Assembly (NCBI RefSeq): GCF_000315625.1
Contig: NW_005434669.1
Span: 757,638 to 821,637, forward strand
Direction: 5' to 3'
Length of the DNA: 64,000 nt
Source of the DNA: Guillardia theta CCMP2712
Lineage: Eukaryota > Protista > Cryptophyta
The position numbers and the translations under genes are program-made. Positions 1 to 6,720 of this stretch are shown here, in pieces (within the stretch, counting starts at the first letter, position 1; each line of letters opens with the position of its first letter). Below the pieces are notes generated by a model. It saw only the letters and a list, made by a program, of their open reading frames with translations. It made no database searches and was not told the origin of the DNA.

Positions 1-601
1 GTTTGACGGGACGGACTGTGTGATGCTATCAGGAGAGACAGCCAACGGGAGCTTTCCGGACACAGCGGTGGAGACGATGGCGTCGATCGTAGCCAATGCT
101 GAGTTGGTCAACAATTTCTACGCCATCTTTGCTTTCATCCGAGATTTCACTCCCAAGGTGAGATTTTTTGATTGCCGCTTTTGCTTCTCACTCTTCTTCT
201 TCGCTTTTCCTTTCTTGGTCTTGATTCTTCAGCCATTCTCCACCAAGGAGTCAGCGGCTTCCAGCGCAGCACAAGCTTGCATTGATGGTCATGCAGACCT
301 TGTGATCGTCTTAAGCAAGTCCGCGGAGAGCGCAAACCTAGTCTGCAAGTATCGCCCTAGTGCGCCTGTGCTGGTTGTGTCTGCGGACGAGAAGATTGTC
401 CGGGGATCGTGCTCGCAGTTTGCCCAGTACGGGTTGTTGAAGAACGTCAAGGACATGTCGCTGGAGGACTTCAAGAAGTCCGGGGCTCTAGAGGAAGCAC
501 TTGCCTATGCTCGCGAGAGGAAGTTGATAGGAGACAAGAGCAAGGGGGTCGTGCTGGTGGCAGAGCAGAGCGAAAAGCATCTGATCGTCTCTCATGTTTG
601 A
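1..601 (+). CDS. PYK: Pyruvate kinase, 3' part (5' truncated by window); intron 158-232
   Basis: DGTDCVMLSGETANGSFP active-site motif and C-domain KYRPSAPVLVV. 75-nt GT-AG pyrimidine-rich in-frame intron. Confidence 0.93.
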   Translation, partial: FDGTDCVMLSGETANGSFPDTAVETMASIVANAELVNNFYAIFAFIRDFTPKVRFFDCRFCFSLFFFAFPFLVLILQPFSTKESAASSAAQACIDGHADLVIVLSKSAESANLVCKYRPSAPVLVVSADEKIVRGSCSQFAQYGLLKNVKDMSLEDFKKSGALEEALAYARERKLIGDKSKGVVLVAEQSEKHLIVSHV

Positions 602-678
602 GATCCAGATGTTTTCATGTTGCAAGCAAGCTGCTGTCTTGCTTTCTATTGTTTTTTTGGAACAAAATGTTTGTCATA

Positions 679-2534
679 TCAGAATTGCGACAACAGTTTC
701 TCCATGATCATTTGTCCCTTCCTCAGGTTGAGGATTCGAATCCTCTCATTGGGCAGGTGTGCGTTGTCCGACGCTTGTCCCATGGGCAAGTGAATTGCTG
801 GGGCCTTGAGCGTCTGCTCCAGGAAGGTCGTCACACCCCCGTAGCTTCCTCCTTCTCGCACCAGGATGGGTTCTATCCCCCACACCTCGCTCACTGCCTT
901 GGCTGCTTGCCGGAAGATGTTGTGGTCCGTGTTGCCCAGCCACCAGCCAGACGCCTGAAGGAAGACGACGGACAGCGAGTTGGTGGAGTTCCGCTGACGA
1001 AAGAAGTCGTGGAGATGTTTCCTTAGTGCCTCCTGCAGCTGCCCGATCTCCTGCTTGGGAACGAAGTGCAAGCTCAGGCGCCCGACCACAGCCTTGGGAA
1101 TCTTGCGGAAGACTTGAGAGCGGTTGGTGGTCTCGATGCTGCTGACGCTAATCCATGGCTCTGACCACCTTGACTTGAGGATTTCTTTCCTGTCCTCCGT
1201 GCGGAGCTTGGCGACTCCGATGCTCTTGCAGTAGCTGTCGATGTCGAGCTGCAGGGCGGTGTACCTCGCCTCTTCCTCCTCCGACACCGGCTGTAACCCA
1301 ACGAGCAGCTCCTTGACCTGCATCGCTTGTTAAGGAGGACGTGGAGGTTGCGGGAGGAAGGTGAAGTGAAGGATCAGGAGGAGGTTGGAGGGGAGGACGA
1401 GGAGGGAGAGACAGGGATACCGCCAGTCGTCCTTGTTGGTCCGTGAGAGAGGCAATGAGGGCGGTCAGGTCGTGCATTGGCTCGTTGACGGCTCCTCCGT
1501 CCACTCCCGAGTGCAGATCCTTGCTTGGTCCGGTGACCCAGAGCTCGAAGTCAATGACACCCTGGTAGAAGCGCTAAGGATGAGGAGAGAGAAACAGACA
1601 GGCGAGACGAGACGAGGGAGAGAGATGAGGGTATGTGTGTGGGGAGAAGAGAGCGACGAGAGAGGAGGGAGACTCGGGGAATGTGAACTACGGGGCGGCG
1701 AAGATGAACAGAAGCGAGGAGATAGCTTGAGACAAGGAGAAGGGCAAGGAAGATGAGGAAGAGGAAGAGGAAGAGGAAGGGGAAGAGGATAATAAGGAGG
1801 AATAATAGTGCATGAGGGGGAGAATAGCGGGATAGCAGGAGGAGACTGACCCGCATTCCGTAGGTCAGGCAAGGGCGCTGGTCGTCGATCCAGTAGTTGT
1901 TGCTGATGATGATGGCCCGGCAGTTGCCGAACCAGTGCATGTGGTCGACGATGATCTCCTCAAGGCCTCGCTCGGAGAGGCTCAGGCCGCTCTCTTCCTC
2001 CCCCTCGATCACAAACGTCACGTCCACCTTGAGCTCCCCCCTCTCCATCAGATTCTTCACTGCAAAGAACGACGCCAGCAGTGGGCCCTTGTTGTCCGAT
2101 ACTCCTCGTCCGTAAAGGTACCCGTCCCTCCCGCACAGAGTGAAGGGGTCCGAGTCCCAGTTTGATGGCTCCGCAAAGGCGACATCGTAGTGTCCATAGA
2201 TCAAGATGCTCTCCTTCCCGCCCCCTGCCTCCTCCTCCTCCTCCTTCATCTTCTGCTCCTCTTGCCTCGCTGCCTTCACGTTGCATGCAAACTTGGCGAG
2301 CACGCATGGCAGACGCGGATGTTTGCCAGAGGGAGCAACGAGCTTGACCTGTGCTCCGAGAAACTCCAGCGTGGTGGCGGCGAACCTTGCGGCGTGCCAG
2401 CAGTCCTCCTGCAAGTATCGACTGGAGCTGATGGAAGGGAGGGAGATAAAGTCCCGCAGGAGGTTGTAGAACGTGAGCTCATCATCGTCCACGTCACCCG
2501 CGTGAAATCGAAACTTCTTGCGCGCTGACAGGGT

Positions 2535-2582
<48 letters not shown>

Positions 2583-5500
2583 TCCTGCGCCTATTTCCTT
2601 ATCTTCTTCTCTTGGCCTCACCGCGTCTTCGCTCTCCTTGTCTGCATTCTTCCGCTTGCCTCCCACCCCGATGCCCAGAGCCTCCAGCACCTCCTGCGGC
2701 AGCTTGGAAGCATCTTGTGGGATAGCAGGAGCCTCTCCCTGCTCCTGCTCCTTCCTTGACACGAGCGAGCTGCCTCTCTGCTCCTTCCTTGCCCGCCTCA
2801 GGTCTGGGACGTTCCAGGAGACGATCCGCCCTGCGTCTGTGCCGCACATGATGACCGAGAGCGTCTCCTCTACCGACACGCAGTGCACGGGACCCCCGCC
2901 AGCCGAGAGCGTCTGTCCCACCCCATCAGAACAGACAAGAGGAGCAGCAGCTTCCCACACCTGCAGCACTCCGTAGCTCGAGCGGTCGATGATTTGGAGG
3001 AAACCGCTGGCATAGCCAGCGAGGAGGACGGAGGGAGTGACGGCGAGGGCGAGCACGTCGCTCTTGCCGGGGAGCGTTCGCTTGCAGGCCAGCAGGTCGA
3101 GATCCCAAACCCTGCGAGGAGGTCAGGGGCGACGACACTCTGCGCTCATACCTGATCGCCCCGTCCGTCGCTCCTGTGAACAAGGAGGAGGAGGAAGAGT
3201 CGGCCACTATCGCCATCACTGCTCCTCGATGCCCCGCAAGCGTCTTGATGAACCGCAACGTCGACTTGTGCCAGAGCTTCACCCGCCCGTCGCCTCCACC
3301 GCTGCAGATGAAGTCGCCGCAGGAGACAACACCGAAGACGAAGCCGCAGTGCGAGGAGACTCTTGTGACGCTCGACTCACAATGCGACTGACAGACTTCG
3401 AGCGAAGAATGGGGCTGCTTCCTCCCGTCGCTCTTGCTGCACTGCTGCTCAATTCTGCAGTGACGGATGGTCCTCAGACAAGCTCCGGCTTCTTTCATCT
3501 GCTCTTCCTTCAGACCCTGCGAGGCATCCCTGAATTTTATCCTCTCCTCCTCCTCCTCCTCCTCGCTCATCTCCCTCAGCAAGAATTGCAGTACGTCTCC
3601 CCTTCTCTGCCGCGTTGACTCTCCTCCTTCCTTCTCCTCTCCTCCTTCCCGCTGCCCCTCCCTCAGCGGGCATCTGTCTCTCAGGTCGAACGTCGCGCAC
3701 CTCACGGTCGCGTCCTGCGAACCAAGAAGGAGGAGGCCGTCGGAAGTCACTGCGAGCGAGAGGATGTGACCTACCGACGGGCAGCGGATCTTGCAGCGGA
3801 TGCTGATGCCATGCGCAGGTTGAGAGGCATCCCAGACCAGGAGGCTGTTGTTGGACACGGAGCTGAGCAGCCAGGGCCCTGTCTCTGCGAGACAGAGAGC
3901 GAGGATGCATCCGTTCTGCGGACTAGTACGGCTGAGAAACTGCCAAGTCTCGACATCGTAGACGCTGATGGCGCCTGTCTCGCCCCCGTCGCTTGAGAAC
4001 GCAAACTTGTTCTTCATGCAGACGGCAATGACTGAGCACTTGCTGCCGGAGTTGAGGACATGGATGGGATACCTCGCGGGCGTCTGCGGGCTCGGGCGCT
4101 CGTTTGGTCGGCTCATGTAGCTCTTTGCCCACGTCTGGTTCATCAGCGCAGCTTCGCGTCCTGCAGACCTCGGGCTGAACTCCATCTGCATGCTCTTCGC
4201 TCCATCCTGTTGGCTCCCAGGGTCAACACGGTCGCCGTCTTCTCGGGAGTCAACGGAGGAGTTGAGGGATAGGTCCTTCGCTCTCCTCGTGTTGAGGGGA
4301 ACCTTCCTGGAGTTGGAGGTGGAAGGTGACGACGATGACGTCACAGCGTGCAGGCCTGCCATGAAGCTCGACCTCGGGTTGCAGCCGCAACCAGGAGGAC
4401 AACCTTTGCCGTGCGCCTCCCCCATGCCGCCGCGGAGACTCTCAATCTTCATGACGTTCTTCATGTGATCCAAGAAGCTGATCGTCTTCCCTGGCGACGT
4501 CACCTCCTGCATTCCCGGTGCCTTGAACGAGTCGTCAATCTGAACTTGCAGGCCTGTGAACGGCTTCTCCGAGACAGGCTCCATCGTCTTGAGCTCCCCC
4601 AGCTCCGCCTCGCCCCCCAAGCTGCGAGAGCGATCGAAGAGGTTGTTCACTTTGATGGGCAGGTGAGTCATGATCTCAATCGTCCTCCTCGACGCGTCCG
4701 ACACCTCAAAGCCCAGGTCGTTGTACGTCCGCGGGGTAAGGAAAGCGTTCTCCAAGCCGCTCGTCCGACCAGAGAATCCAAGGGAAGGAGGCATGTCAAG
4801 AGAGGCATTGGGGCTCCGAGGTGTCCCGCTGGGAGAGCGGGAGAGGACAGGAAGGCTTCCGTTGCTCTGGCGAGGCATGCCAGCTCTGTCATGGCCGAAC
4901 TGCTCCAGCACCTCGTTGAGTTCGCTCGCCGCGTACTTTATCGACGTGTTGGCCTCTCCCTCCAGCATCACGGGAGCTAGCAGCACCTGCCGTAGAGGCG
5001 TGACGAGGACGATGTGATTCTTGGGCACGGGGATCCAATCGGCTCGCACGTTGGTCAAGGGCTCGGAGGTGATGATGACAACATCATCCCTTCGGTCCTC
5101 GTGCACCATCCTGTACTCCCTCAACGGCTCTTGCATCACCGCAGGGCACTTCTTCCCCTCCGGCATGTCGGGAGCTTCTGCAGGAGTCAGGGAAGGCTCG
5201 AAGCTCGTGCCGGAGGAGAAGTAGAGAGAGGCCGCAGGCACATTCTTGGTCCGGTTGATCACGTAGCGCGTCGCTGCCAGCGAGTTACCATCCGTCACCA
5301 CGAAGTTGAGGAGGGAGGTTTCGTTGACGTTGTGCCTCTCCAGAGCATCGCTGAGGGATTGGATCACCTTGGTCAGCTTCATCTTCATGTGCTGAGGGGA
5401 GATGGCGGCGTGCGGGTCGTCCAACTGATCGATAAAGAGTGCGAACGCAAGGGCGGAGTCGGAGGCGCTGTTGGCGATGCAGAAGTCATACGCGCACTGG

Positions 5501-5934
5501 CTCAGCGTGTCCATGAGCTCCCTCCGGATCTTCTTGAACCCTGCGACCTGCCCGTTGTGCATGAAGAGGAACCGCCCGTACTCGAAGGGATGGCAGGAGC
5601 AATGGCACACCCCCATGCCGGGACCGGCCGCGCGCACGTGGGCGAAGATGACGGAGGAGCGGACCTTGCAAGCGAGACGGTGGAGGTTGCGGTTGTGCCA
5701 TGCTGGTCCGACCTCAGTGAACACGCAGGGGGTCACGTCCTCGGAGTCGTCCTGGGAGTACCATCCCAGCCCGAACCCATCGGCATTGAGGTTGCCGAGG
5801 TCGTACACCTGTCCCCCAGACCCTCCCAGTCGCTCCCTCGCGTCAAAGGATTGTCTGATGACGCTCCTCGTGGGTCGCGTCACCACATCTGCAGCAAGTG
5901 TACTGTGGCCGAAGTATGCCGTTAGCCTGCACAT
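679..5934 (-). CDS. Fused glutathione-degradation protein: class II glutamine amidotransferase (Dug3-like) + WD40 + M20 peptidase domain (Dug2-like). Exons 5934-3152, 3111-1851, 1561-1421, 1317-679 (~1607 aa)
   Basis: N-terminal MCRL Ntn-cysteine; NADGFG, FAHVRAA, FMHNGQ, DSALAF motifs. WD40 repeats (GGGDGRVKLW; spliced GAIRVWD). M20 motifs YGHYDV, GRGVSDNKGP, EGEEESG, spliced YGMRG...DLHSGVDGG, DNAHLPNE. GT-AG introns restore the conserved motifs. Confidence 0.88.
2534..2588 (+). repeat. (CCTGCT)n hexamer repeat encoding a (Gly-Ala)n linker
   Basis: Tandem CCTGCT units, read as GAGAGA... in the minus-strand exon between the WD40 and M20 domains. Confidence 0.9.
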
Positions 5935-6720
5935 CTCAACTCCGGGGAGTCGAAGGAGCTGACTGCTTCCCCCCTGCTGTGACTGCTTTTCCCCTGTTTT
6001 CTTTATCAGGCCCCCACCCCTCTCACTGTTTGTCCTGAAACTCCTCGTCACTTCTATCTCTTGACCTCCCCTGTCAACTTCATCATCTTGTTGTATTCAC
6101 TTGCTCCTCCTCTCCTCCTCCTCTGCTGCTTCCCACCCCCTTCTCTCTCTTCCACCATTCTCTACTGCCACCCCCTTCGTTCCGCCCCCAGTTTCGCCCT
6201 CATCCCCGCACTGACACCATGCATTCTCAGCATGTCACTGAGCGTGTTTCACCGGGCCGAGCGGCCCGGACAATCTAAACGCCATTGACAATTGTGCCTT
6301 TAAATTCAAATTCCTCTTTTTGCTTATAAATATTTAATTTTCAATAGAATAGTTTCAAATTTTCCTCGTCGAGGCTTGTAAGAATTCCTTGGGTCATACC
6401 CCACCCTTGAAACCCTGGAGAAATGTAAGGGTGGTCATGAGAGGCCGCACCCTCTCAGCGGGTGGGGCGAGAGTTCTTTAGGCAATAATATAAAAGTATT
6501 TAAAGTTACCCCTCATCACCCCCTCAAACACTAATTGACTACCCACCATCTGGCTCCATACCCCCTCGCTAATTACCCCCTCTATTAAATTGCCTATTGC
6601 TCGCTTCCTACCACCCCCATGTCGATTACCCTCTTTATGGCTAAATAAAATGTGATAAAACTACCGGTAGTGTCTGAGATAGGCTGCCGTTCCATCGAAC
6701 TGGATCAGTGAAGGCCTCGC

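What the first reader, a model, noticed from the sequence alone, without database searches (positions are those of the whole stretch)
679..5934. Single-chain Dug3-Dug2 fusion: the fungal glutathione-degrading complex as one polypeptide in an alga
Seen: a class II GATase domain starting with an Ntn Cys (MCRL) is in the same uninterrupted ORF as WD40 repeats, via a long S/P-rich linker. A 40-nt GT-AG intron (3151-3112) joins GAIR|VWD, and later introns rebuild M20 peptidase motifs. Known: in yeast, Dug3 (GATase II) and Dug2 (WD40+M20A) are separate subunits of a complex that cleaves the gamma-glutamyl bond of glutathione independently of gamma-glutamyl transpeptidase; the pathway is usually described as fungal. 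Inference: this is a Rosetta-stone fusion that places the DUG pathway in a secondary alga. The Dug3-first order is needed to keep the catalytic Cys N-terminal.
Basis: partly seen in the sequence, partly recalled or inferred. Interest (0 to 1): 0.82.

Follow-up and report, generated by a model that had tools for sequence, protein, structure and literature searches.

The report
Single-chain Dug3-Dug2 glutathione-degrading enzyme gene
This alga carries one expressed gene that joins the two subunits of yeast's glutathione-splitting enzyme (Dug3 and Dug2) into a single protein, but dozens of non-fungal eukaryotes have the same joined form, so the "fungus-specific" label in the literature is too narrow.

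Summary
A five-exon gene on the minus strand (5934..679) encodes a 1591-aa protein. It reads: class-II (Ntn) glutamine-amidotransferase domain starting Met-Cys, a 285-aa Ser/Gly/Pro-rich linker, a WD40 propeller, then an M20A peptidase domain. Spliced transcript contigs from three runs show four GT-AG introns. One contig runs unbroken from the 5' UTR through the amidotransferase domain, linker and WD40 region.

The M20 domain falls with fungal Dug2, not with CNDP/Dug1, and shares a Dug2-type signature: the metal ligand Asp195 of CNDP2 is Asn. The amidotransferase domain scores below the EgtC cut-off, as fungal Dug3 proteins do.

The fusion is not special to this alga. I found 75 proteins with the same domain order, in red and green algae, Euglena, an amoebozoan and an ichthyosporean. 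Fungi and oomycetes have the split form. The genome (87.1 Mb, 669 contigs) is probably Guillardia theta. It has no separate Dug1/CNDP-type gene.

This is a real, expressed, single-chain variant of a known enzyme. It is present in databases, but I found no description of it in the papers I could search. Interest is moderate. The scan's earlier notes hold nothing on it.

The parts
679..5934 (-). Whole coding region of the fusion gene (start ATG 5934-5932, stop 681-679); spliced product 1591 aa
5935..6012 (-). 5' UTR as far as transcript contigs reach (X1 to 6012, X3 to 5992, X2 to 5970); no upstream ATG
3152..5934 (-). Exon 1: GATase domain, linker and most of the WD40 region (aa 1-927 plus 2 nt)
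   Evidence: contig X2 record 6 and X1 record 3 are continuous across it
4930..5934 (-). Class-II (Ntn) glutamine amidotransferase domain, Dug3-type, aa 1-335, nucleophile Cys2
4075..4929 (-). Low-complexity Ser/Gly/Pro-rich linker, aa 336-620; about 200 aa longer than in relatives
2802..4074 (-). WD40 beta-propeller region, aa ~621-1015, with an acidic insert; crosses introns 1 and 2
3112..3151 (-). Intron 1, 40 nt, GT-AG, joins GAIR|VWD
   Evidence: (X2, X3)
2961..3111 (-). Exon 2 (151 nt)
2913..2960 (-).
   Evidence: (X1, X2, X3)
1851..2912 (-). Exon 3: last WD40 blades, second linker, N-terminal half of the M20 domain
2527..2595 (-). GCAGGA tandem repeat (Gly-Ala run) in the second linker; the only place where transcript contigs break
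1562..1850 (-). Intron 3, 289 nt, GT-AG, CT-rich
1421..1561 (-). Exon 4 (141 nt), holds the DLHSGVDGG motif
1318..1420 (-). Intron 4, 103 nt, GT-AG
679..1317 (-). Exon 5: C-terminal half of the M20 domain and stop codon
682..2501 (-). M20A peptidase domain, Dug2-type, aa 1116-1591 (crosses introns 3 and 4)

Best explanation
The gene encodes a cytosolic, single-chain counterpart of the yeast (Dug2p-Dug3p)2 enzyme. After the initiator Met is removed, Cys2 of the N-terminal class-II amidotransferase domain acts as the Ntn nucleophile. It hydrolyses the gamma-glutamyl bond of glutathione, and probably of other gamma-glutamyl peptides, giving glutamate and Cys-Gly. The amidotransferase domain is tethered by a long disordered linker and docks on the WD40 propeller. 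The C-terminal M20A domain of Dug2 type serves mainly as a dimerisation and scaffold module, not as the Cys-Gly dipeptidase. Shown here: gene structure, expression, domain content, conserved catalytic residues, kinship of both halves, and a predicted GATase-WD40 interface in the nearest full-length relative. Inferred: the substrate, the cytosolic location (an N-terminal nucleophile leaves no room for a targeting peptide), the dimerisation and the non-catalytic role of the M20 domain.
For: Gene model and expression. Spliced contigs from three runs give four GT-AG introns, and one contig is continuous over 5970..2596. The CDS is 1591 aa with one stop. Runs from six studies hold the stretch.

GATase half. 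GATase_4 is above its cut-off. Cys2 and every position conserved in at least 93% of 90 family members are kept: R3, H99, R101, H115, P116, H126-N127-G128, R138, D159, N210, D215-G216, R223. The EgtC model TIGR03442 gives 171 bits, below its 218.65 cut-off. Fungal Dug3 proteins score 143-166 and other fusions 165-180, while bacterial 285-aa proteins score 209-235. Solved EgtC is distant at 44.5 bits. In the tree the window lies in a eukaryote-only clade of 44 rows (SH-aLRT 98), and the bacterial group forms one side of a branch (91).

M20 half. The CNDP/Dug1-type proteins form a separate clade (96). The window groups with WD40-M20 and fusion proteins. P0388 of that clade scores 429 bits to CNDP2 and 385 to yeast Dug1. 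The CNDP2 ligand Asp195 is Asn in the window, in all fungal Dug2 and in all but one fusion M20 domain (Ser in two rows that are near-copies of each other), but Asp in all four CNDP-type rows. H99, D132, E166/E167 and H445 are kept.

Architecture. 75 proteins have GATase and M20, always in this order, and 51 start with MC. One relative is a single uninterrupted 1261-aa ORF on a 158-kb eukaryotic contig.

Interface. For P0002 GATase (1-345) against its WD40 region (415-835), ipSAE was 0.76 with best control 0.00. That mark was reached by 51 of 78 solved complexes and 2 of 108 mismatched pairs. The runs agree in at least 68% of contacts, and partner pLDDT is at least 78.

Yeast biochemistry. (DUG2-DUG3)2 cleaves GSH to Glu and Cys-Gly, and (DUG1)2 cleaves Cys-Gly (PMC9804317). 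The complex also cleaves gamma-Glu-Met (PMC7617739).
Against: No enzyme assay exists for any fused form. The transcript contigs break at the GCAGGA repeat 2527-2595, so no single read or contig was shown to span from the GATase domain to the M20 domain. The 2026 raw RNA reads (X19) gave almost no depth on the gene. The GATase tree has no outgroup. By score, the bacterial 285-aa proteins are as close to the window as fungal Dug3 proteins are. The interface test was run on a homologue (54% identical in the GATase part), not on the window's own protein, and it is only a model. The M20 domain keeps the catalytic Glu and four of five metal ligands, so it may be an active peptidase.
Confidence: 0.75

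Rival explanations
1. Complete glutathione breakdown in one chain. The M20 domain of the fusion is an active Cys-Gly dipeptidase, so the protein does the work of Dug3, Dug2 and Dug1 together.
For: The window's M20 domain keeps His99, Asp132, the catalytic Glu166, Glu167 and His445 (CNDP2 numbering). A CNDP2/Dug1-type query finds nothing in the 87-Mb genome except the fusion gene's own exons. The two best of the four other M20 loci were scanned and are of the amidohydrolase (M20D) and ArgE/DapE types; the other two were not classified.
Against: The fifth ligand, Asp195, is Asn, exactly as in fungal Dug2. Yeast still needs Dug1 although it has Dug2: dug1, dug2 and dug3 mutants are each defective (PMC9804317). 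From my memory of Kaur et al. 2012, Dug2p has no peptidase activity. Some fusions (red algae) have lost Glu166 (QGEGE), so catalysis is not conserved across the family. Cys-Gly can be cleaved by unrelated aminopeptidases. The genome search works exon by exon and can miss genes.
Confidence: 0.2
2. The fold and chemistry are the same but the physiological substrate differs. The enzyme removes gamma-glutamyl groups from other gamma-glutamyl peptides or thiol conjugates rather than from glutathione itself.
For: The nearest curated model is EgtC, which acts on a gamma-glutamyl-cysteine sulfoxide conjugate. The yeast complex also cleaves gamma-Glu-Met (PMC7617739). The genome already has a gamma-glutamyl transpeptidase (C40) and a ChaC-like gene (C14) for glutathione.
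Against: It is below the EgtC cut-off and far from solved EgtC. The coupling to a Dug2-type WD40-M20 module is the hallmark of the glutathione enzyme. In Euglena the orthologous contig rises when glutathione falls under hypoxia (PMC6351624).
Confidence: 0.15
3. Two neighbouring genes (a Dug3-like gene and a Dug2-like gene) are wrongly read as one.
For: The protein collection holds a 312-aa product for this genome that ends inside the ORF (P0044). Contigs can merge overlapping transcripts: X1 record 1 and X2 record 5 run on about 500 letters beyond position 650, into the convergent neighbour.
Against: There is no stop in 927 codons of exon 1, against 41 and 16 in the other frames. RNA-derived contigs are continuous over 5970..2596 on one strand. 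There is no ATG-led restart signal, and 75 homologues have the same fused order, one of them an uninterrupted genomic ORF.
Confidence: 0.03

Closest known systems
Saccharomyces cerevisiae (Dug2p-Dug3p)2 glutathione-degrading amidotransferase (DUG pathway)
   Same: The parts are the same: an Ntn class-II GATase with Cys2, a WD40 propeller and an M20A domain. The window's M20 domain carries the Dug2-type Asp195-to-Asn change. A GATase-WD40 contact is predicted, as reported for the yeast complex. The expected reaction is glutathione to Glu plus Cys-Gly.
   Different: It is one polypeptide instead of two subunits. The parts are joined by a 285-aa disordered linker, with extra low-complexity inserts in the WD40 region and before the M20 domain. 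No Dug1 partner gene was found in the genome.
Fused GATase_4-WD40-M20 proteins of other eukaryotes (Cymbomonas tetramitiformis CYMTET_55016, Chlorella vulgaris, Prototheca wickerhamii, Gracilaria and Agarophyton, Porphyridium aerugineum, Planoprotostelium fungivorum PROFUN_10293, Euglena gracilis EG_transcript_716)
   Same: The domain order is identical and most start with MCR. Both halves show the same broad grouping in their trees. The nearest relatives, unnamed metagenome proteins P0002-P0005, P0166 and P0045-49, are 54-75% identical to the window in the domains.
   Different: The window's protein is among the longer ones (1591 aa against a median of 1341), because of its linkers. None of these relatives has been characterised. 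Their names in databases are generic or wrong, for example 'Cys-Gly metallodipeptidase DUG1'.
EgtC (ergothioneine biosynthesis amidohydrolase, TIGR03442; PDB 4ZFJ)
   Same: Same Ntn class-II GATase fold family and the same kind of gamma-glutamyl hydrolysis. It is the best NCBIfam hit.
   Different: It scores 171 bits against a cut-off of 218.65, and only 44.5 bits to the solved EgtC. EgtC has no WD40-M20 partner. The bacterial 285-aa look-alikes labelled EgtC had no recognisable ergothioneine genes beside them in the two contexts read.
CNDP2 / yeast Dug1 (M20A Cys-Gly and non-specific dipeptidases; PDB 2ZOF, 4G1P)
   Same: Same M20A fold over the whole domain. The relative P0002 scores 280 bits to CNDP2. 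The catalytic Glu and four metal ligands are kept.
   Different: They form a separate clade (SH-aLRT 96). Asp195 is Asn here. The domain here is fused behind a WD40 propeller, not a free ~480-aa enzyme.

Membership tests
Dug3-type class-II (Ntn) glutamine amidotransferase (Pfam GATase_4) | Cys directly after the initiator Met (Ntn nucleophile) | tested here: met
   MCRL at 5934; no upstream ATG in frame. 83 of 90 aligned family members start MC.
Dug3-type class-II (Ntn) glutamine amidotransferase (Pfam GATase_4) | Match to GATase_4 above the curated cut-off, and the family's conserved residues | tested here: met
   38.6 bits against a cut-off of 23. All 43 positions conserved in at least 93% of rows are kept, including H126-N127-G128, D159, N210, D215-G216 and R223.
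Dug3-type class-II (Ntn) glutamine amidotransferase (Pfam GATase_4) | Groups with eukaryotic Dug3 and fusion sequences rather than bacterial EgtC-like ones | tested here: met
   The window lies in a eukaryote-only clade (98). The bacterial group forms one side of a branch (91). The tree is unrooted and was built by the quick method.
Dug3-type class-II (Ntn) glutamine amidotransferase (Pfam GATase_4) | Hydrolyses the gamma-glutamyl bond of glutathione in a Cys2-dependent way | not testable with these tools
   Needs an enzyme assay or yeast complementation.
Dug2-type subunit (WD40 + M20A) | WD40 propeller directly N-terminal to an M20A peptidase domain | tested here: met
   WD40 hits at aa ~632-937 and M20 at aa 1116-1591.
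Dug2-type subunit (WD40 + M20A) | M20A domain of the Dug2 lineage, not CNDP/Dug1 | tested here: met
   The CNDP-type clade is separate (96). Asn replaces CNDP2 Asp195 in the window and in all fungal Dug2 rows, while the four CNDP-type rows have Asp.
Dug2-type subunit (WD40 + M20A) | The amidotransferase docks on the WD40 domain | tested here: inconclusive
   The model supports binding for the homologue P0002: score 0.76 against a best control of 0.00. The mark was reached by 51 of 78 solved complexes and 2 of 108 mismatched pairs, with at least 68% of contacts shared and partner pLDDT at least 78. It was not run on the window's own protein, and it is a model only.
Dug2-type subunit (WD40 + M20A) | Homodimerises through the M20 domain | not tested
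   Known for yeast only from my memory of Kaur et al. 2012, which is not held in the library.
EgtC (TIGR03442 equivalog) | Score at or above the curated cut-off of 218.65 bits | tested here: not met
   171 bits.
CNDP2/Dug1 Cys-Gly dipeptidase (M20A) | Full set of five metal ligands including Asp195, and placement in the CNDP clade | tested here: not met
   Asp195 is Asn. The window lies outside the CNDP clade.

The most novel reading that the evidence does not exclude
The fused Dug3-WD40-M20 protein may be the ancestral and still predominant eukaryotic form of a cytosolic glutathione-degrading amidotransferase. The well-studied two-subunit fungal enzyme, and the split oomycete genes, would then be products of later gene fission. 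On that reading the 'fungus-specific DUG pathway' is a pan-eukaryotic pathway that was first seen in its derived state. In lineages such as this alga, which lack a Dug1/CNDP gene, the fused protein or an unrelated peptidase would complete the pathway.
Probability: 0.45. Interest if true: 0.6.

Novelty: new variant of a known kind. Interest (0 to 1): 0.45.

Why it matters
Recent papers still call the DUG route of glutathione breakdown specific to fungi (PMC9012958). This gene and its 75 relatives show that the Dug2/Dug3 enzyme exists, as one chain, in algae of primary and secondary origin, in euglenids, in an amoebozoan and in a relative of animals.

Three things follow:
- There is a natural Rosetta-stone confirmation of the Dug2-Dug3 partnership.
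- A single-gene version of the enzyme becomes available for expression and structure work.
- The question of whether the fungal complex arose by fission can be tested.

It also adds a cytosolic glutathione-recycling route to the sulphur and nitrogen economy of marine algae. The gain is comparative and annotational rather than a new mechanism.

Tried and rejected
- The raw RNA reads of 2026 (X19) gave depth only at 650-1013, plus a trace in the 1378-1559 bin, mostly from the neighbouring gene's 3' end. They add nothing on the fusion.
- The look-up of encoding contigs for the window's own 312-aa product P0044 found nothing on record, so I could not see how the source annotation divides the locus.
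- The primary yeast papers (Kaur et al. 2012; Ganguli et al. 2007) are not held. What I say of WD40-mediated binding, M20-mediated dimerisation and Dug2's lack of peptidase activity rests on memory.
- The supplement of the Euglena paper held no text on the degradosome contig. A search for 'glutathione degradosome' found no paper. One broad literature search was badly framed and gave only algal reviews.
- I considered EgtC membership and rejected it: below cut-off, distant from solved EgtC, and a different partner architecture.
- I considered that the ~480-aa hits of the big search were all CNDP-type. Most proved to be fragments of Dug2-type proteins, and only four were CNDP-type.
- I considered that P0166, the nearest M20 relative (1075 aa, no GATase), shows a split form in close kin. 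Its contig carries one continuous frame from the end of the GATase domain onward, so it is a 5'-truncated fusion.


Full report
**1. What is in the sequence**

On the minus strand, an ORF of 1041 codons runs from 6051 to 2926. Its first ATG is at 5934 and the product starts MCRL. The 117 nt upstream within the ORF hold no ATG.

Pfam finds GATase_4 (38.6 bits, cut-off 23) and WD40 repeats (44.6 bits, cut-off 27) inside this one ORF. It finds Peptidase_M20 in two downstream ORFs, 1551..3056 and 679..1323. NCBIfam gives EgtC (TIGR03442) as the only hit for the N-terminal domain, at 171 bits, below the cut-off of 218.65. For the C-terminal ORFs it gives M20 dipeptidase models.

Exon 1 has no stop in 927 codons, against 41 and 16 stops in the other two frames. 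The 285-codon linker alone has 0 against 9 and 8. The open frame between the two enzyme parts is therefore maintained by selection, not chance.

**2. Gene model and expression**

Fifteen public runs from six studies hold the stretch or a part of it. I laid four runs on 650-6100. The contigs of X1, X2 and X3 skip four segments with CT..AC ends on the plus strand, which are GT-AG introns of a minus-strand gene. This also shows that these contigs derive from RNA.

The four introns are:
- 3151..3112 (40 nt; seen in X2 and X3)
- 2960..2913 (48 nt, in frame; seen in all three runs)
- 1850..1562 (289 nt)
- 1420..1318 (103 nt)

The 48-nt intron is new.

X2 record 6 is continuous from 5970 to 2596, covering the 5' UTR, GATase, linker and WD40 region. 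X1 record 3 runs from 6012 to 3151. Records 1, 5 and 7 cover 2526 (X3: 2190) down to 650 (X3: 687). The only gap, 2527-2595, is a GCAGGA tandem repeat, where short-word assemblies break.

Joining the exons gives 4776 nt, or 1591 aa, with one terminal stop. The splices rebuild conserved motifs...GAIR|VWDL... in a WD40 blade, and ...LTYGMR|GVIDFEL...DLHSGVDGG... and ...GRLA|VKELL... in the M20 domain.

What is not shown is a single molecule that spans the whole gene. The 2026 raw RNA reads gave almost no depth here.

**3. The N-terminal half**

The domain (aa 1-335) keeps Cys2 and all 43 positions that are conserved in at least 93% of 90 aligned family members. These include H126-N127-G128, D159, N210, D215-G216 and R223.

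Among solved structures, the best match is an uncharacterised class-II amidotransferase (3MDN, 91.7 bits). Mycobacterial EgtC is far off at 44.5 bits.

Scores against the EgtC model fall in this order:

| Group | TIGR03442 bits (cut-off 218.65) |
|---|---|
| Window | 171 |
| Fungal Dug3-type proteins (four fungi) | 143-166 |
| Oomycete standalone (Aphanomyces) | 162.5 |
| Other fusions (Cymbomonas, Euglena) | 165-180 |
| Bacterial 285-aa proteins (three tested) | 209-235 |

In a maximum-likelihood tree of 90 domains, the window sits in a clade of 44 eukaryotic rows (33 fusions, 10 standalone rows and the window; SH-aLRT 98). The standalone rows in it are short or partial gene calls. The 26 bacterial proteins form one side of a branch (91). 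Fungal Dug3, oomycete, Euglena and Planoprotostelium sequences lie between them. The tree is unrooted.

Two of the bacterial proteins sit in ordinary bacterial neighbourhoods with no recognisable ergothioneine genes. Their 'EgtC' label is therefore nominal.

**4. The C-terminal half**

I could not hand a spliced protein to the searches, so I used the M20 domain of the nearest full-length relative, P0002. It scores 280 bits to mouse CNDP2 and 218 to yeast Dug1. The fold is therefore M20A.

An exhaustive search of 1.84 billion representatives with that domain lists mainly long proteins in which the match lies behind 300-1000 residues, that is WD40-M20 or full fusions.

In a tree of 66 M20 domains, four ~480-aa proteins form their own clade (96). 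One of them, P0388, scores 429 bits to CNDP2 and 385 to Dug1, so this is the CNDP/Dug1 type. The window lies elsewhere, next to P0166 (99) and with P0002-P0005 (99).

A discrete character agrees with the tree. The metal ligand Asp195 of CNDP2 (motif ISDNYW) is Asn in the window (ISNNYW) and in every fungal Dug2 row, including those named DUG2. It is Asn in every fusion row but two, which have Ser and are near-copies of each other. It is Asp in all four CNDP-type rows (numbering from the alignment).

The window keeps His99, Asp132, Glu166, Glu167 and His445. Red-algal fusions have lost Glu166.

**5. How widespread the fusion is**

A word search with exon 1 returned about 35 proteins of 1100-1450 aa that carry all three domains. 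The M20 search added more. By phmmer, 75 proteins in my set hold both a GATase and an M20 domain. The GATase comes first in all 75. In 71 the GATase match begins within the first six residues, and 51 start with MC.

Named fusion examples:
- Red algae: Agarophyton chilense, Gracilaria domingensis, Porphyridium aerugineum.
- Green algae: Cymbomonas tetramitiformis, Chlorella vulgaris, Prototheca wickerhamii.
- Amoebozoa: Planoprotostelium fungivorum.
- EukProt entries EG_transcript_716 and CFRG7853T1. From memory, these prefixes belong to Euglena gracilis and the ichthyosporean Creolimax fragrantissima.

Split forms:
- Fungi: Dug3 at about 350 aa and Dug2 at about 870 aa.
- Oomycetes: Aphanomyces and Saprolegnia.
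- Apparently Nannochloropsis and Balamuthia, where a WD40-M20 protein was seen without a GATase domain.

One relative (P0004) is an uninterrupted 1261-aa ORF on a 158-kb contig, among eukaryotic genes. The window's nearest M20 relative, P0166, looked split. Its contig in fact has one frame running from the end of the GATase domain onward, so it is a truncated fusion.

The broad grouping is the same in both trees:
- a window group;
- red algae;
- green algae;
- Creolimax with P0167;
- Euglena with P0041, near Planoprotostelium and the split lineages.

This fits an old fusion whose halves have evolved together. Direction, whether ancestral fusion with later fission or repeated fusion, is not settled by these unrooted trees.

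**6. The organism and its other glutathione genes**

The window is C5:757638-821637 of an assembly of 87,145,349 bases in 669 contigs. Guillardia theta is reported at 87.2 Mbp (PMC9756366). The taxonomy holds a species and one strain entry, which fits the two organism labels among the runs. I take the organism to be this cryptophyte, a secondary alga. This rests on circumstantial evidence only.

The genome has one copy of the GATase domain. A CNDP/Dug1-type query hits only the fusion's own exons. Four other M20 loci were found. The two best were scanned and are of the amidohydrolase and ArgE/DapE types; the other two were not classified. A gamma-glutamyl transpeptidase gene (C40) and a ChaC-like gene (C14) are present.

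So the organism has the Dug2/Dug3 step but no recognisable Dug1.

**7. How it most likely works**

[quoted passage not shown] The complex also cleaves gamma-Glu-Met (PMC7617739).

By analogy, the window's protein uses Cys2 as the Ntn nucleophile after Met removal. This explains why the GATase must be first, and it argues for a cytosolic location, because a targeting peptide would bury the nucleophile. That step is inference.

A complex prediction on P0002 supports a contact between the C-terminal part of the GATase domain (residues about 252-336) and the WD40 propeller. The score was 0.76 against a best control of 0.00. That mark was reached by 51 of 78 solved complexes and 2 of 108 mismatched pairs. 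The runs agree in at least 68% of contacts, and the partner's pLDDT is at least 78. This is a model, not a measurement, and it was run on a homologue.

From memory of Kaur et al. 2012, the yeast Dug3-Dug2 contact is through WD40, Dug2 dimerises through M20, and Dug2 has no peptidase activity. I could not read that paper here.

The Asp195-to-Asn change shared with yeast Dug2 makes me favour a scaffold and dimerisation role for the M20 domain. The retained catalytic Glu and the missing Dug1 keep an active-peptidase reading open, at about 0.2.

**8. Novelty**

Papers of 2022 and later still call the pathway specific to fungi (PMC9012958). A 2025 Dug3 paper compares fungi only.

The one exception I found is a 2019 Euglena study. 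It names a single transcript contig as the orthologue of the 'GSH degradosome proteins', reports that it rises in hypoxia, and does not comment on the fusion (PMC6351624). I found no paper that describes the fused architecture. The library lacks most subscription journals, so this is weak evidence of absence.

The proteins themselves are in public databases under generic or misleading names. For this genome, the collection holds only a 312-aa truncated product.

**Verdict.** The gene is real, expressed and correctly interpreted. It is a single-chain variant of a known enzyme, one member of a large and apparently undescribed set. Its main value is in correcting the pathway's supposed distribution and in offering a one-gene form for experiments.

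Noticed in passing
window 20-681, + strand: A convergent gene, whose last ORF (20..601) looks like the C-terminal end of a pyruvate kinase by eye, ends with a poly(A) tail added at about 681 in raw RNA reads. Its 3' UTR therefore overlaps the stop codon (681..679) of the fusion gene, and contigs of X1 and X2 run on from the fusion gene into it.
   Followed up: partly
window 3112-3151: In run X1 the contigs break at the 40-nt intron: record 2 reads 3 nt into it, record 3 starts at 3151, and no joint is seen. X2 and X3 show the splice. This may be partial intron retention, which would shift the frame and end the protein at 2926.
   Followed up: no
P0044 (window 4999-5934, minus strand): The protein collection holds a 312-aa product for this genome that stops at ...NHIVLVT inside the open frame. 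The existing gene call for this locus does not show the fusion.
   Followed up: partly
G000:C40:47687-49652 and G000:C14:616396-616702: The same genome has a gamma-glutamyl transpeptidase gene and a ChaC-like gene, so it has up to three routes for glutathione breakdown. No CNDP/Dug1-type dipeptidase gene was found.
   Followed up: partly
L016 5001-5858; L017 2391-3248: Bacterial 285-aa amidotransferases that score near the EgtC cut-off and are labelled EgtC by JGI lie beside DsbD-like, MerT-like or SDF transporter genes. No gene with a recognisable ergothioneine-pathway family is nearby, so the label may be wrong for this group.
   Followed up: partly
L015 11-4108: A metatranscriptome contig called as a 1075-aa WD40-M20 protein (P0166) has one continuous frame that aligns to window residues 269-1577. 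It is a 5'-truncated fusion from a close relative, not a split form.
   Followed up: yes
window 2527-2595: A perfect GCAGGA tandem repeat encodes a Gly-Ala run in the linker before the M20 domain. It is absent from relatives and is a likely site of length variation between strains.
   Followed up: no
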